The notes under the pieces were generated by a model, which saw only the letters and a program-made list of their open reading frames with translations, was not told where the DNA came from and made no database searches. Below, in pieces: positions 17,522 to 23,879 of a stretch of DNA of 64,000 nt; position 1 is the first letter of the stretch; each line of letters begins with the position of its first letter. This stretch comes from Fimbriosthenelais zetlandica (lineage: Eukaryota), in NCBI GenBank assembly GCA_977030845.1, contig OZ365114.1, positions 23,250,001 to 23,314,000 of the forward strand, read 5' to 3'. Made by a program: the position numbers and the translations under genes.

Positions 17522-20500
17522 TCACACGTTTAGTATACACACCTTACATTTGCTAATTTTCTCTCTAGCTGTACGTAGATCGTAAACACCACTGGGCTGG
17601 GAGGCCATGTCTACATTAACTAACCAGAAAGATAGTTTGTCAGAGAAAAAGTGACACTCCCCTCTCCCATTACACTCAATATAGGGATTAGAACGGAAGT
17701 TCTCCAAGCAGCTTCCTGGGCTTGATAAAGATTGTCCTCCTCCCATCGCACCAATAGCATGCTGTAAAAGAAAGTACACTGAAATTACTTCAATCTCATG
17801 TGCATAACTATGGCAAAATTATTCATGATAAGGTAATTGTCCTCGTTGATATGCTCCCGCCATATACTCACCATGATGAAGCTATAACCTCGCCAGAGTT
17901 CTCGCCAACCCTGTGGGCAGACGGGAACTCTGGAGCTCTGACTGTGAACAGCCATGACAGGAGCATGAGAGAGACAGACGCGACACCTGGAGATGTAGGT
18001 GAGAAGCTCTGAGCGGTTCTCTAACGGCTTATCAATGATGGCCTTGTCACTAGAGAGCCAATACGAGGTGGAGGTGCGCTTAGAATGTGAACATGAACCA
18101 TGGATATCACACATCATGAAAGGCATTGGGCTGAACTTTTGCATACAAGACCCTGCTGCTCCTGTAAAAGCAATGGACAAACACATGACCTGACGACATT
18201 ATTGATAAGATGGTGTGGGATTTTTAGGCTATAAAAGATGTGGGAAGTTTTGAGCCATTGCCTACCTAAATCCTGCACCTGGGCCCTGCCATCGTCTTCA
18301 GTATGTAGGAGAGAGTAACCCTGCCAAAGAGGTTGATGATGCCTGCCGCAATCAGGCTCCCTCCCACTCTGACTGTGTCGCGAATAAATATACACCGCAG
18401 ACCCAGATACACTGGACAGACCTGACAATAAAAAGAAACATTAAACAGGAGAGGAAGACAAAAAAACATGGACTTGAGGAACAGTACAATAAAAGAACCT
18501 ACCCATGGGTCCCCTTCTTCCATAATCTTCTGAACCTCCTTCAGTCTCTCCTGGGGACCCGGGAGGTCCAGGTGGACCAGGGGGACCTGCTTCTCCCTGC
18601 AAATGGACATGATCATGTAAAATAATGCCACTAGATTTACCGCCAGAATATTACAGTGTGAAGTCATATTATGAAGAGAAAGATACCTTTTGACCAGAAT
18701 GTCCAGGCAGACCTGGGTGGCCAGTGGGCCCCACTCTACCCGGATGACCTCTCCCATCGCCACCACGTTCTCCTTTATCTCCCTTCTCTCCTCTATCCTG
18801 GAGGGAGACCTCTGTCTCTGCCCGGCCTTGTGGTCCCGCTGGACCAGGATCACCAGGAGTTCCAGGTCTCCCGGATGGTCCCGGAGGACCTGATCTCCCC
18901 GGTGGTCCTGTTGGACCCCGGAGACCGAAACCTGGAGGACCAGGAGGTCCAGGCTTACCCGGTACACCACTCATACCCATCTGTCCTTTTTGGCACTGTG
19001 GGAGATTTTGATTTGTAGGCCTACGATGTGATGATCCAGATCCTCTAGAATGGCCTTGAATACATCAAAATCTTCCATTAATATACAGCTCGAGTACAAC
19101 GAAACATTAAAAGAAATATGAGAAATATTTTCTTATGGGTAATCACTTACTACTATCGCCTCTCTCGCCTTTTTCACCTTTCTGTGCCTGAAATATTAGA
19201 AATGAATTCAGTGATTGGAAAGGAAAAAATTACATCTACATCAGGAATCAGGAATCAGAAGTAGGTCACCACCCATGGCGCACCAGCACAATCTGAAAGG
19301 ACCTGATGGTTGCCTCATTCTAAAATTATTCTCGTACAACATTTGGAGACTGTTCATCTTCTTGGGAAGGGACACAGTAACAGATCTTGAGATGGACACA
19401 ATATTCATGAGGTCCTTCATACCCGCATACGACCATGAAGTCTCCTCATCACGTCGTGAACCAAACGTTCATAGTCTCTACCGGAAGTGACGTCACATCC
19501 ATTGTTTCGGTTGTGGTGACTTGGCCTACAAGGCTCTCCAGGCTCTCCCTTAGGTCCTGGTATTCCTCTGTGACCCTAAACAGAAAGTTTCCAATCTTAG
19601 ATTGAGAATATAGTTCGTTTTTTTAATTATCAATGGGGGAGAATTAAAGATACGCTCAATTATGATACGATTTTAAAGGTTTTACCTTACGTTGGCATAC
19701 CATGTTACACCGACCGTCAACATGAGCATCCTCTACAGCAATGGGTCCCCAGCCTGTTCCTGGTGGGCCCGGTGGTCCTAAATAGAAAATCTTATGTTCA
19801 ACAAAGATTTTTGTTTCAATATATTGAGATTTTAAATTGTGTTTTATTAAACACAAGAAAGGCATTGTTTTCTGGCCTCACCTTTATCTCCTTTGTCGCC
19901 CTTATGCCCCTGAAAAGAGATTTAATTTTAGTTTTAAAATAGAAATGTTTCATTGAAAGAAGTTGCATTATTCAGACTTAATTCAAGAGCAAGAGACAAG
20001 CCTCCCCACTGCATGGCTGAGAATAGCAGCATGGTGTTTGGGGTCGGTTATACAGGAATGTCCATTCCATTGTTGGGATAATGTTATATCCTTGTAAGAG
20101 ATGCTATATTTTTGTTACATTATCTTACTGCTAGGTACTCACATCTCCTCCACTGTAGCCATCAGACCCACGAGAACCAGGCCTGCCTTGAGGTCCCTTA
20201 AAACAATAACACAACATATTAAGCATAACAATGAGCACAAATATCTCGGTCATACAGTGTGCTGAACATTATGGACTTTTTTCATAATTCATTTTGTTTA
20301 CCACTGCTCGAGTTTTCCTTGCCAGTATCACCCCCTTGATCTAGTGCATTTGTATTAAATCATTATGATTCTGTAGAGATTAACACATTTTCCTTGAGTC
20401 ATATTCATGGGAAAGCACGTACCGGAAGTCCATTTAATCCAGGAAGTCCCGGAGGCCCTGGCTTTCCCTGCATGCAATCAGAAGACCATTTACATTTCGA

Positions 20501-22554
20501 TTAATATATATTTATAGATCTATTTATTTTCTCTTGAATCACAATATTGAGTAACCCTTTCTCACAAAGAAATCATCATTTAAAAGATTTAATTTTAGTT
20601 TTAATTATTTGATTGATTATTATCATATACATACATGTCTATTATGATTTAATAATAATCAATATCACATACATCTTTTCCATGTATTCCTGGTGTGGCT
20701 GATCGGCCAGGTGGGCCTGGGTGACCGTCTCTCCCAGGTGTACCTGGTAAACCAGGCGTACCTGGACTTCCTGGTCGGCCCGGGTATCCTCCACCCTGAA
20801 ACCCACGAGTAGAATAGTCACTTTATAAATAGCCCTATACACATGCCATGTTGTTTCCGTCCAATAGCAGGTGGGGGCGAGAGAGGCCGCTCTATGTAGC
20901 GCAATCAGACTCAGAGAATACCCTTCCACTTCATTTAACAAACGGGCCACATGTTGACCGATTCACAGTCACTTCTCAGGCTATACGTATACCTTTGGAC
21001 TTATATACTTCACAATAGTTTCAACACTTCCATTACAACTCGGATATATATCACACCCAATATAAGATTGATAAACCCATCGCCTCAAGGCACCTATACA
21101 TCAATATTTCTGTTCACGGGAGAGAGACGAGAAGGAGTTAAAATTGGTGAATATCTGTTTAGAGTTCCAGGATTGTATGTACATTGAAACTCCACTCAGG
21201 TAATTGCCTTCACACATTTCTGGACACCACGAAACCCAGATTTATGGACCTTTCATGAACTCTTTTGTCACCCCGAGTATCGAATAACCAACAGCTGATA
21301 CTAATGGATAGTTCGGCAATGGGAGGACATATCAAGGAGATCCAATCTCACAGCTGTCAAAGGTAAGACTATTTGATTCTACTTACAATGACTGAAGAAA
21401 ACATTGTGTTTATTCAAGTCATGCATAGATCGATAATATTTTCAACTGAAGTGTGTGTTTTTAAAAAGTGATAGCGTATCAAATGTATGACAGGTTGAGT
21501 TTATTGACTTGTGAAACAATCTAGATGAAAAAATGCTTTGATTTTGTGGAATGATAAAGGAGCTTACCCCACTTTCTGGATATGTCCCGCCTCCATACCT
21601 TCCTCCTCCTGTGTCTGGGTATGGTTGTCCACCCCTCCCTCCTTTAATGTATCCTCCAGCATATCCTCCTGGTCTTCTATCCTCATCAGTATAAGGTCCT
21701 CCTCCATTATTTCCTTCCCATCCTCCCCCTTCTCCTTCACCTTCTCCCTCACCCCTTCTTCTGCCACCCTCTTCTCTTTCTCCTGGACGTTTGTAGTGCT
21801 CTTCACCCACTATTTCCGGTTCAGGTCTAAGATCCCTATCTGGACCAGTCCCTCCCCCTCTTCCATCCCAAGTACCAGTACCCACCGTTTCTGGTCCTAC
21901 TGGATATTCAGGAGAGCCATCTCCATCTGTTCCTGTCCCAGTCGACCCAGGAGGAGGCCCCACTATTAATGTTGGAATTGTGGTGGACAACCCTTGACCT
22001 TCCTCGTCATCATCTTTTGCATCTATATCACCTCTGAGAGAACGGTTTTCTTCCACCCGTTGTCTTTTTGATCTCCTCTCTCCTCTTTCAGCCTTTCTTT
22101 CACGTTTTCTGTTACGTGTGTCCTGATAAGTCCGCCTCTTTCTGAGCAGGACCTGTTCAACATTGGCTGATTTCCCGCCAGGATTGTAGAACTCAGCCGG
22201 AAGTGGGCCAATAATACGGGCTTTAATGGACACTTCCGGTGTGAGGAGACCTTCACCTGTCCTTGGCGAATCATCCGATGATTCTGGTCTTTGATTGTTT
22301 ACAGGAAGCCATGAGAGATTCTGAGTTTTTGATTTTGTGCTGCTGGGTGACAGTTGGTTAGGAGAGGCTTCCCCTGAAACTGTAGGAACCGATTTAGGTA
22401 CTAATTCATAGTGTGTATACCAAAATCTTGAAAGGCGTTGAATTAAAAAAAAGTGAAAAAACGAAAGTTTACAAGAGATATAGAACACGATCTTACCTAT
22501 AAGGATCAAGCCAGCCACTAGGGCAGCGATACGTCCAAACCACTCAGCGTCCAT
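17522..22554 (-). CDS. Short-chain collagen with a C-terminal type IV collagen NC1 (tandem C4) domain, ~847 aa
   Basis: Exons (minus strand): 22554-22497 (signal [20 protein letters not shown]), ~22373-21568, 20795-20673, 20467-20423 (45 bp), 20196-20143 (54 bp), 19909-19882, 19777-19686, 19575-19423, 19187-19151, ~19054-18687, 18596-18503, 18421-18266, 18161-17872, 17761-17522; total 2544 nt, in frame. NC1 motifs [78 protein letters not shown]; all 12 Cys present. The acceptors at 22373 and 19054 are the least certain. Confidence 0.9.
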
Positions 22555-23879
22555 ACTTGATTGACTGAACTCACATATATAACATACTCTATACTGTAAC
22601 AGTCTCATTCATTGTTTCATTATCCTGCAAAAAATCACCAGAATACTTCCTTTAGCATGTAATCCCATCTAAGATGTCAGCAAAGTGGCTAATTTACTCA
22701 CCCGGCTATCTAAATAGCTTTACCATCCATTGGCAATGCTAAACTCTCTATGATTGGAGGAAATTGCCATGGGCCGCCATTAAGAGGGGTTTTCACTCTT
22801 TCAGAAAGGCCCCCTCAATGTAAGCAATCTGAGGTCTTTATCAGAGGGTCAGGCTGTTATCACGTCTAGGGCATTGCCCTTGCCGATTGACGATGCCCTC
22901 GGGCTAATATTGCAACAGGTTGGAGACATTGGGCAGTGGAGGGTCATTTGATAAGGGCCTTATCCTACATGAGTGGCCATAGAACCACTGACTTCCTATA
23001 GTGCAATGATATGTTGATGATCTTATCTCAGACAATGCTACTGATATACTCGCCACTTAACCGCCATCTGACTTAGAGCCGAGTCATGTTTTGACTCCTT
23101 CTTTTCACACATAATGCAGATTGACATAAAGTGTTGTTGCAAATTGGGAAAAAATGAATAAAAAGTTTGTCGGGTTCTCTGTGCTTTGCATCTCTCACTA
23201 CCTATAATGGTGTCAGTTTTTTCAGGGAACAATTTGAGTTCCTGTTTCGTGCATTGTTTTGTCTGGGAGTCTGTTAGTATGGACCGCCCACGACCCTTCA
23301 CCAATTTATAGATTTATTCACGGCTTTTAAAGACATGCCTTAGTGGCATGGCCTCCGATGGTATAGGAATTTTCAGTATGGCTCTATAGTTACTTGATTG
23401 TAAAGTTAGATACGTTAGTCTAATGTTAGGTAGGTGCATATCATAAACACTCATGTTTAAGCAATACCATCCAATTAAATTCACATTTGCATGTTATGAA
23501 TTATCTCAAATGTGTCAATTGTCTCGGGTTTCAAACTATGGACATTTTGGGGATACAGATGTTAAAATATTGGTGGAAAATATCTTGATAAGAAGGGGAA
23601 AATATCTGTGATTCGACAGAGGGAAATAAGGGACTGGCAGAATGACAAGAAAGTACATAAACCTTAAGTGAAGCAGGTGAAAAGCACTTACCTTACAACT
23701 GGTTCCCCATATCTTAATCCATTACTTCCAGAACCAATCAATTCTTGCTGGTAAGCTGCTAAAGTCCGACTACCTTATATCCGCAGCGTTTGTATCTTTT
23801 GCCCAGACCTATGACTATCCCAGCGGGGTTCACTTAACTTAAGGCACCTATATATACATAAAATCTGTGTTTATATATT

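What the first reader, a model, noticed from the sequence alone, without database searches (positions are those of the whole stretch)
17522..22554. Miniature type IV-like collagen: canonical NC1 on only ~70-75 Gly-X-Y triplets, with no 7S domain and no head-to-head partner
Seen: about 847 aa in total. The Gly-X-Y sequence is split into short blocks by Cys-bearing interruptions ([14 protein letters not shown]...GC, PQCQK). Established: basement-membrane alpha(IV) chains have ~1400 collagenous residues and an N-terminal 7S domain, and are usually encoded as divergent gene pairs. Spongin short-chain collagen-related proteins are short, but their NC1 is divergent. Inference: this chain pairs a short helix with a near-canonical 12-Cys NC1, and no second collagen IV gene is evident on the + strand upstream, suggesting a separate short-chain class.
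Basis: partly seen in the sequence, partly recalled or inferred. Interest (0 to 1): 0.72.

Follow-up and report, generated by a model that had tools for sequence, protein, structure and literature searches.

The report
Miniature collagen IV-like gene, annelid
This worm genome has an intact gene for a collagen with the normal end-knob of basement-membrane collagen IV on a rod about one sixth the usual length; it belongs to a separate, apparently undescribed branch of the collagen IV family that exists beside the normal gene pair.

Summary
On the minus strand at 17522-22554 lies a 14-15-exon gene. It encodes a signal peptide, a roughly 270-residue cysteine-free charged and Gly-rich N-terminal region, 71-73 Gly-X-Y triplets in four blocks, and a complete collagen IV NC1. 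Two of the interruptions between blocks carry cysteine pairs. The NC1 has two PF01413 halves, 12 Cys and both HSQ motifs.

No other collagen-coding exon lies in the 64-kb window, and there is no divergent partner gene.

The genome (447 Mb, probably an annelid) holds a normal head-to-head alpha1/alpha2(IV) pair 6.3 Mb away on the same chromosome. It also holds a third, mid-length NC1 gene (about 240 triplets) on another chromosome.

In an NC1 tree the window gene, that third gene, a Lamellibrachia gene, one transcript and two metagenome proteins form a clade with 100/99 support. The clade is marked by LLHTEDD, loss of Asp78 and a one-residue deletion. Complete members from an unidentified compact animal genome are also short (about 106-124 triplets).

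The window chain is not a spongin. Unlike its relatives it lacks both sulfilimine cross-link residues (Met93, Lys211), and it has no 7S-type cysteine cluster.

No RNA data could be found, so the 5' exon link and two internal splice choices remain inferred.

Verdict: a real gene and a new variant of a known kind, of moderate interest.

The parts
22497..22554 (-). Exon 1: ATG, then a signal-peptide-like [19 protein letters not shown]; ends in phase 1 at donor GTAAGA
   Evidence: A at -3 and G at +4 around the ATG. This is the only signal-like start found upstream of the collagen exons. An in-frame ATG at 22608 is also possible.
21568..22379 (-). Exon 2: about 270 codons. Cys-free, charged (RKRR, RSKR, RGD, acidic patch), then a Gly/Tyr/Pro-rich tail; donor GGG|GTAAGC in phase 0
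   Evidence: Part of a 388-codon open frame. No Pfam hit. Unique in the genome. No Atlas look-alike. Its link to exon A is inferred from phase, strand, proximity and matching composition.
20673..20795 (-). Collagen exon A (13 triplets, with one Gly-to-Ala imperfection)
20423..20467 (-). Collagen exon B (5 triplets)
20143..20196 (-). Collagen exon C (6 triplets)
19882..19909 (-). Collagen exon D (3 triplets, ends on a split Gly codon)
19686..19777 (-). Exon E: 3 triplets, then interruption 1 with a Cys pair ([10 protein letters not shown])
   Evidence: The donor AAG|GTAAAA was chosen as the best of three phase-0 candidates.
19423..19575 (-). Exon F: 5 triplets, then interruption 2 with a Cys pair ([12 protein letters not shown]). 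The donor is uncertain (19482 in phase 1, or 19423 in phase 0).
19151..19187 (-). Exon G: small 37-nt collagen exon (GEKGERGDS), possibly a cassette exon; strong acceptor and GTAAGT donor
   Evidence: It is used in model 2 only.
18687..18995 (-). Exon H: about 34 triplets with a 9-residue interruption (ETEVSLQDR). The acceptor is at 18985 (phase 1) or 18995 (phase 0).
   Evidence: (PF01391, E 6e-12)
18503..18596 (-). Exon I: last collagen block (GPP-rich) and the junction to NC1
18266..18421 (-). NC1 exon J: first HSQ, Cys1, the LLHTEDD signature; ends in phase 1 after QDL-G
   Evidence: The junction is confirmed by the intronless transcript P0274/L030.
17872..18161 (-). NC1 exon K: Cys2-7, R76 loop (KRTST), second HSQ
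   Evidence: (PF01413, E 2e-28)
17522..17761 (-). NC1 exon L: Cys8-12, E175, R179, stop codon
   Evidence: (PF01413, E 5e-20)

Best explanation
This is an intact, selectively maintained gene for a secreted miniature collagen IV-like chain. It belongs to a third collagen IV lineage (here called the 'LLHTEDD' clade) that coexists with the canonical alpha1/alpha2 pair.

Shown:
- the exon structure and its open frames;
- the canonical NC1;
- about 72 triplets;
- the absence of a 7S-type Cys cluster, Met93, Lys211 and Asp78;
- the retention of Arg76, Glu175 and Arg179;
- the clade membership.

Inferred mechanism:
- The NC1 nucleates trimer formation in the ER, and the helix zips from C to N into a segmented rod of about 60 nm.
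- The rod's short blocks are locked by inter-chain disulfides at the two Cys-pair interruptions.
- Outside the cell, NC1 trimers can still dock head to head through the conserved Arg76-Glu175/Arg179-chloride interface.
- That joint cannot be welded by peroxidasin, and there is no 7S tetramer.
- The product is therefore a non-covalent dumbbell, or a cap on other NC1 trimers, rather than a polygonal network.
- It would display a charged N-terminal arm that carries an RGD and is rich in Gly and Tyr.
For: Gene model: 14-15 exons, all AG/GT, compatible phases, complete ORF in three splice variants.

NC1: PF01413 on both halves; 12 Cys and 2 HSQ; 69 of 76 highly conserved canonical columns kept. Splice junctions inside the NC1 are confirmed by an intronless homologous transcript.

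Helix: Y-position Pro in 33 of 71 triplets.

Clade: support 100/99, with shared derived characters. The AU test rejects the window gene and the C13 gene as sisters (p = 0.007). The lineage therefore predates the split from Lamellibrachia and has stayed intact since.

Other members: complete short chains with signal peptides occur in independent assemblies.

Key residues. Their roles are taken from PMC4878091 (R76, D78, E175, R179, N187) and PMC13098435 (Met93-Hyl211).
Against: No RNA run could be listed, so expression, the exon 2-to-A junction and the F/G/H splice choices are unverified.

The N-terminal region is an orphan low-complexity sequence.

Trimer and hexamer formation were not modelled, because a spliced protein cannot be passed by reference.

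The terminal branch of the window NC1 is the longest among the annelid-like members (0.88). That could mean relaxed constraint.

No clear orthologue with the same miniature architecture was found. The nearest sequence, P0274, is 58-60% identical, carries at least 265 collagenous residues (5' incomplete) and keeps Met93 and Lys211.
Confidence: 0.66

Rival explanations
1. These are two genes, not one. The 388-codon upstream open frame (21442-22608) belongs to a separate gene for a secreted low-complexity protein. The collagen/NC1 gene starts elsewhere, giving a chain of about 540 aa.
For: The exon 2-to-A junction is only inferred. The frame runs on for about 40 codons past the proposed donor to a stop at 21442. 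Exon 2 has no homologue that links it to collagens.
Against: No signal-peptide-like start exists between 20796 and 21567 in any frame. The donor GGG|GTAAGC and the acceptor TTTCAG|GGT are both phase 0. The Gly/Tyr-rich end of exon 2 runs smoothly into the Gly-Tyr-Pro start of exon A. Both parts lie on the same strand with a 772-bp gap.
Confidence: 0.17
2. This is a decaying or non-functional truncated duplicate of a longer collagen IV-like gene, that is, a partial duplication on its way to becoming a pseudogene.
For: It has the longest terminal branch among close relatives. It has lost Met93 and Lys211, which all its relatives but one keep. No expression data exist.
Against: There is no stop or frameshift in about 2.4 kb of coding sequence across 14-15 exons, and every splice site is canonical. 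All 12 NC1 Cys and 69 of 76 conserved columns are kept. The lineage is old, not a recent copy of the C13 gene (AU p = 0.007).
Confidence: 0.08
3. It is a spongin short-chain collagen-related (SSCR) protein of the kind already known to be widespread in invertebrates.
For: It has a short helix with a C-terminal collagen IV-related domain, and it comes from a non-ecdysozoan invertebrate. Both fit the SSCR description (PMC5395295).
Against: Spongin NC1 domains lack HSQ motifs, share only 7 of the collagen IV cysteines and have 3 of their own (PMC5395295). They are not recognised by PF01413 (PMC12749355). This NC1 has both HSQ motifs, all 12 Cys and strong PF01413 matches.
Confidence: 0.02
4. It is an assembly artefact. 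A collapsed repeat of collagen exons makes a normal-length gene look short.
For: Collagen exons are repetitive and can collapse in assemblies.
Against: There are no Ns in the window. The introns are short and unique. Each collagen exon has a distinct sequence. Short chains of the same clade occur in three independent assemblies.
Confidence: 0.04

Closest known systems
Canonical basement-membrane collagen IV alpha1/alpha2 chains (COL4A1/A2, emb-9/let-2; here C21:16.91-16.99 Mb)
   Same: C-terminal NC1 made of two C4 (PF01413) halves, 12 Cys, two HSQ motifs, and Arg76/Glu175/Arg179 of the chloride-dependent hexamer interface. An interrupted Gly-X-Y helix. Two NC1 intron positions are shared: phase 1 after QDL-G and phase 0 after YSFxM.
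   Different: About 72 triplets against more than 400. No 7S-type Cys cluster. No Met93 or Lys211 (the sulfilimine residues) and no Asp78. Unpaired, 6.3 Mb from the pair. A distinct NC1 clade with a one-residue deletion and the LLHTEDD motif.
Unpaired 'COL4 single genes' of protostomes (Owenia fusiformis pair plus single gene; planarian col4-1 to -7; Schistosoma)
   Same: An extra collagen IV gene outside the head-to-head pair in a spiralian. PMC12141075 reports exactly this gene count for the annelid Owenia. Planarian chains form their own cluster outside alpha1/alpha2, and one of them (col4-3) lacks the sulfilimine residues (PMC8072372).
   Different: Those papers describe gene counts, or full-length chains with 7S domains. 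Neither of the two papers read (PMC12141075, PMC8072372) describes a miniature chain or the signature seen here. Whether the Owenia single gene or the planarian cluster belongs to the same clade was not testable here.
Spongin short-chain collagens / SSCR family (Exposito 1991; Aouacheria 2006)
   Same: A short collagenous domain with a C-terminal domain homologous to collagen IV NC1. Found in invertebrates outside Ecdysozoa.
   Different: The spongin NC1 is only remotely related. It has no HSQ, shares 7 Cys and has 3 unique ones, and gets no PF01413 hit (PMC5395295, PMC12749355). The window NC1 is canonical.
Amphioxus predicted short chain, XP_019628580.1 'collagen alpha-4(IV) chain-like' (534 aa; P0043)
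   Same: Signal peptide, about 66 triplets and a canonical NC1. It is another short collagen IV-like chain beside a normal repertoire.
   Different: It forms its own long-branched amphioxus clade (100/100) on the alpha1 side of the tree, so it is an independent shortening.
Short-chain network collagens VIII and X (functional analogy only)
   Same: A short rod with a C-terminal trimerising globular domain that mediates head-to-head assembly.
   Different: Their NC1 is a C1q domain, unrelated to C4. This comparison rests on general knowledge and was not tested here.

Membership tests
Collagen IV alpha chain (canonical, network-forming) | C-terminal NC1 made of two tandem C4 subdomains (PF01413) | tested here: met
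   E 2e-28 and 5e-20 on the two NC1 exons; four hits over the cut-off at this locus.
Collagen IV alpha chain (canonical, network-forming) | 12 conserved NC1 cysteines and two HSQ motifs | tested here: met
   12 Cys, RHSQS and VHSQS, and 69 of 76 conserved columns kept.
Collagen IV alpha chain (canonical, network-forming) | Long interrupted triple helix of about 1,300-1,400 residues | tested here: not met
   71-73 triplets and about 308 residues. No further Gly-X-Y exons lie in the 41 kb upstream.
Collagen IV alpha chain (canonical, network-forming) | N-terminal 7S domain with a Cys/Lys cross-linking cluster | tested here: not met
   no Cys between residues 23 and 396 of the model. The N-terminal region has no Pfam match.
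Collagen IV alpha chain (canonical, network-forming) | Met93 and Lys211 for the peroxidasin-made sulfilimine bond | tested here: not met
   Asp at both aligned positions, numbered from Arg76 of an alpha1 reference. Roles are from PMC13098435.
Collagen IV alpha chain (canonical, network-forming) | Chloride-switch residues Arg76, Asp78, Glu175 (plus Arg179) | tested here: inconclusive
   Arg76, Glu175 and Arg179 are kept. Asp78 is Ser, and it is lost in all six clade members. Roles are from PMC4878091. The consequence for assembly is unknown.
Collagen IV alpha chain (canonical, network-forming) | Head-to-head arrangement with a partner COL4 gene | tested here: not met
   no plus-strand collagen coding in the window. 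The pair lies at C21:16.91-16.99 Mb.
Spongin short-chain collagen-related (SSCR) | Divergent NC1: no HSQ, 7 shared plus 3 unique Cys, not matched by PF01413 | tested here: not met
   set against the descriptions in PMC5395295 and PMC12749355. No SSCR sequence was available for a direct alignment.
Spongin short-chain collagen-related (SSCR) | Short collagenous domain attached to a C-terminal NC1 | tested here: met
'LLHTEDD' collagen IV-like clade (unnamed; defined here) | Monophyly of the NC1 and shared derived characters: YIY before the first HSQ; LLHTED(D/E)GR; Asp78 lost; a one-residue deletion in H-xxG-xxGGGQ; PY(I/M)ECN | tested here: met
   (support 100/99; 100% of bootstrap trees)
'LLHTEDD' collagen IV-like clade (unnamed; defined here) | Helix shorter than canonical (about 70-250 triplets) and unpaired gene | tested here: met
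   Window gene 72 triplets. C13 gene about 240. Lamellibrachia gene at least 209 within 10 kb. Metagenome genes about 106-124, with signal peptides.

The most novel reading that the evidence does not exclude
Spiralian animals carry a third, so far unnamed class of collagen IV-like chains (the LLHTEDD clade). These chains have shortened helices and an altered chloride-switch loop, and they build a suprastructure distinct from the alpha1/alpha2 network. The window gene would be its extreme form: a rod of about 60 nm without 7S or sulfilimine sites. It would act as a non-covalent NC1 dumbbell, or as a cap or adaptor on collagen IV-type NC1 trimers, carrying an RGD-bearing, Gly/Tyr-rich arm.
Probability: 0.3. 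Interest if true: 0.65.

Novelty: new variant of a known kind. Interest (0 to 1): 0.47.

Why it matters
Collagen IV is treated as a nearly invariant scaffold: two paired genes in invertebrates, 400-nm protomers, 7S tetramers and sulfilimine-welded NC1 hexamers. A conserved side lineage keeps the NC1 recognition module almost intact while it shortens the helix six-fold and drops both network-forming ends. That is a natural experiment on what the NC1 can do alone.

It also matters for annotation. Public gene models label these chains 'alpha-2(IV)' or split them; the Lamellibrachia gene model found here, for example, covers only the 3' part of the gene. Counts of 'COL4 single genes' in protostomes may therefore hide a distinct class.

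Recombinant mini-chains of about 800 aa would be far easier to express than full collagen IV for assembly studies.

Tried and rejected
- RNA evidence: two searches for sequencing runs listed none, and one attempt met a busy server. Read laying was therefore never used.
- Physella query: a search with the Physella 556-aa 'alpha-2(IV)-like' protein returned mostly fragments of canonical chains. That protein's own NC1 sits with the gastropod alpha2 chains, so it is not a relative of the window gene.
- N-terminal exon: no Pfam family, no paralogue in the genome, no Atlas look-alike.
- 5' end of the C13 paralogue: not found within 19 kb upstream.
- L037, another assembly with a clade-type NC1 exon: only 19 triplets within 10 kb, which is inconclusive because its introns are large.
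- P0045 locus: no DNA was served.
- Source organisms: accession numbers of the transcript and metagenome sources were found in no paper, so those organisms stay unidentified.
- Aouacheria et al. 2006 is not held. The spongin criteria were taken from PMC5395295 and PMC12749355 instead.
- Structure and complex prediction of the window NC1 were left out.
- Recent duplication from C13: rejected by the AU test.
- All three homologous-protein searches see only proteins of 0.55-1.75 times the query length. Full-length mid-size members of the clade could therefore not be surveyed.
Full report
THE GENE

The window is AT-rich animal DNA (about 39% GC) without any N. On the minus strand between 17522 and 22554, six-frame translation shows a chain of short open segments. 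They encode Gly-X-Y repeats followed by a collagen IV NC1.

Reading the DNA at each border gives exons with AG acceptors, GT donors and compatible phases.
- Exon 1 (22554-22497) encodes [19 protein letters not shown]. It has a good start context and ends at a GTAAGA donor.
- Exon 2 (22379-21568) encodes about 270 residues.
- Nine small collagen exons follow (A to I, 20795-18503).
- Three NC1 exons close the gene: J 18421-18266, K 18161-17872 and L 17761-17522.

Two places are ambiguous.
- The 117-nt first intron is in frame and open, so it may be retained.
- Exon F has two usable donors, exon H has two usable acceptors, and the 37-nt exon G may be skipped.

All three combinations that I assembled are open from ATG to stop. 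They give 794, 818 and 826 aa with 71-73 triplets. Pro fills 33 of 71 Y positions, as in hydroxyproline-stabilised collagens.

The helix falls into blocks of about 30, 5, 17-21 and 19 triplets. Two of the three interruptions carry a cysteine pair (C-x3-C and C-x10-C).

THE NC1 IS CANONICAL

- PF01413 matches both halves, with E 2e-28 and 5e-20.
- The spliced domain has 12 Cys and both HSQ motifs.
- It keeps 69 of the 76 alignment columns that are at least 90% conserved among 36 canonical NC1 domains from cnidarians to vertebrates.
- The two splice junctions inside the NC1 are confirmed by an intronless homologous transcript, L030/P0274, which aligns across them without gaps.

WHAT IS MISSING

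- The model has no cysteine between residue 23 and residue 396, so there is nothing like the Cys-rich 7S cross-linking region.
- Exon 2 matches no Pfam family. It has no second copy in the genome and no look-alike in the ESM Atlas.
- Exon 2 is charged and Gly-rich (20% Gly, 11% each of Glu and Arg). It contains RKRR and RSKR, an RGD and an acidic patch, and it ends in a Gly/Tyr/Pro-rich stretch that runs into exon A.
- The only runs of four or more Gly-X-Y triplets in all 64 kb are those of this gene, a mirror artefact inside exon A and two short chance runs at 61-62 kb.
- No extra small Gly-X-Y exon hides in 17.4-24 kb.
- There is thus no divergent collagen partner, and no room for a long helix.

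THE REST OF THE GENOME

A search of the whole 447-Mb assembly with PF01413 finds four NC1 loci.

Two lie on the same chromosome as the window, 6.3 Mb away and on opposite strands.
- The minus-strand gene has its NC1 at 16.909 Mb and collagen exons up to 16.931 Mb, with at least 430 triplets.
- The plus-strand gene has collagen exons from 16.973 Mb and its NC1 at 16.989 Mb, with at least 408 triplets.
- This is the classical head-to-head pair.

The fourth locus, on contig 13, is a mid-length gene with about 240 triplets.

A SEPARATE CLADE

I spliced the four NC1 domains. I placed them in a maximum-likelihood tree with 41 NC1 domains from the database searches.
- The minus-strand gene of the pair groups with Lamellibrachia alpha2 (83% identity, support 97/87).
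- The plus-strand gene of the pair groups with alpha1-type chains (98/94).
- One clade has 100/99 support and appears in 100% of bootstrap trees. It holds the window gene, the contig-13 gene, a Lamellibrachia satsuma protein annotated 'alpha-2(IV)' (P0275), a transcript from an unidentified run (P0274) and two metagenome proteins (P0029, P0060).

All members of the clade share derived characters:
- Y-I-Y before the first HSQ;
- LLHTED(D/E)GR in place of LLY-QGNER;
- loss of Asp78;
- a one-residue deletion after the second subdomain's start;
- PY(I/M)ECN.

Within the clade, the contig-13 gene pairs with the Lamellibrachia gene (99/92). The window gene sits with P0274 and the metagenome pair (96/84). 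The AU test rejects the window and contig-13 genes as sisters (p = 0.007; the group was named after the tree was seen). The miniature lineage is therefore old, not a recent truncated copy.

The position of the clade relative to the alpha2-type chains is unresolved, and the tree is unrooted.

ARE THE RELATIVES SHORT?

- The Lamellibrachia gene has at least 209 triplets in the 10 kb upstream of its NC1. Its public model (272 aa) covers only the gene's 3' part.
- P0274's transcript is open for at least 265 collagenous residues and is 5' incomplete.
- The two metagenome proteins come from a gene-dense animal genome. Contig L033 carries three collagen genes in tandem. Two of them are complete enough to read: signal peptide, a short Cys knot, about 106-115 triplets and a clade-type NC1.
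- Contig L035 carries another with about 124 triplets.
- The clade thus spans about 72 to 240 triplets. All are well below the 400-plus of the pair, and the window gene is the shortest seen.

KEY NC1 RESIDUES

Positions were numbered from Arg76 of an alpha1 reference.
- The window chain keeps Arg76, Glu175 and Arg179. These make the chloride-dependent bridge across the trimer-trimer interface, and R76A blocks hexamer formation but not trimer formation (PMC4878091).
- It lacks Asp78, the 'off-state' partner of Arg76. All clade members lack it too.
- Unlike every other sequence in that 11-sequence alignment, it has Asp at both Met93 and Lys211, the two residues joined by the peroxidasin-made sulfilimine bond (PMC13098435). 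P0275 has Arg at 211 but keeps Met93; position 211 is missing from the truncated P0060.

HOW IT PROBABLY WORKS (INFERENCE)

- The NC1 selects and registers three chains, and a segmented rod of about 60 nm folds from C to N.
- The cysteine pairs in the interruptions tie the short blocks together.
- Secreted trimers can still meet NC1 to NC1, but the joint stays non-covalent.
- There is no 7S end to make tetramers.
- The molecule cannot build the polygonal network by itself. Dumbbell dimers, or capping of other collagen IV-type NC1 trimers while presenting the charged, RGD-bearing, Gly/Tyr-rich arm, are the most economical readings.

COMPARISON WITH WHAT IS KNOWN

Spongin short-chain collagens are the obvious comparison, but they fail on the defining NC1 features.
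- They lack HSQ.
- They share only seven cysteines and have three of their own (PMC5395295).
- PF01413 does not recognise them (PMC12749355).

Unpaired COL4 genes in protostomes are on record.
- Owenia fusiformis, an annelid, has the pair plus one single gene (PMC12141075).
- Planarians have seven chains in a cluster outside alpha1/alpha2, one of them without the sulfilimine residues, but with 7S domains (PMC8072372).

Neither of those two papers describes a miniature chain or the signature found here, and my paper searches turned up no other description. The original spongin-family paper (Aouacheria 2006) could not be read.

Amphioxus has an independently shortened chain: 534 aa, about 66 triplets, in its own clade.

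WEAKNESSES

- No RNA run could be listed.
- The exon 2-to-A link is inferred.
- The source organisms of the closest relatives are unknown.
- The length window of the homology search prevented a survey of full-length mid-size members.

VERDICT

This is a real, intact gene. It is a new variant of a known kind, of moderate interest.

Noticed in passing
Proteins P0010, P0062, P0077, P0082, P0087, P0122: Many hits in the representative library are proteins of about 400-450 aa with no collagen repeats. They have a complete two-HSQ C4/NC1 domain at the C-terminus and an N-terminus that looks like a bacterial prepilin (type IV pilin) leader, for example MKLDVRGFSLLEVIV... This suggests that collagen IV NC1 domains are fused to pilin-like anchors in bacteria.
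   Followed up: no
G000:C13:12483806-12485139 (L017:5806-7139, minus strand) and P0275: The mid-length paralogue and its Lamellibrachia orthologue both carry a short tail after the NC1 that holds an RGD motif (…RRGDVPP; …GRGDIPVNER). This is a conserved candidate integrin site. The window gene has no such tail, but it has RGD in exon 2 and in exon G.
   Followed up: partly
L033:4497-11769 (ENA ERZ27333047, k141_782274) and L035:3474-6322: A gene-dense, unidentified animal genome in a metagenome carries three collagen genes in tandem. At least two of them have a signal peptide, a small Cys knot, about 106-115 triplets and a clade-type NC1. A fourth such gene lies on another contig.
   Followed up: partly
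L031 (Lamellibrachia satsuma GCA_022478865.1, JAHXPS010003492.1): The public 272-aa model named 'Collagen alpha-2(IV) chain' covers only the 3' end of a gene whose collagen exons (at least 209 triplets) are assigned to a separate 753-aa upstream model. It is a split annotation, and the alpha2 name is misleading.
   Followed up: partly
P0043, P0017, P0363 (Branchiostoma): Amphioxus has its own long-branched clade of collagen IV-like chains. It includes a 534-aa predicted protein with a signal peptide and about 66 triplets, an independent case of a short chain with a canonical NC1.
   Followed up: partly
G000:C21:16930617-16973359: The canonical alpha1/alpha2 pair is divergent, but 43 kb without any collagen coding separates the collagen exons of the two genes. 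Their first exons and the shared promoter were not located.
   Followed up: no
window 22380-22496 (minus strand): The proposed first intron is 117 nt long, in frame and free of stops. Retaining it would turn the cleavable signal peptide into a longer hydrophobic stretch (…[13 protein letters not shown]…) that could act as a membrane anchor.
   Followed up: no
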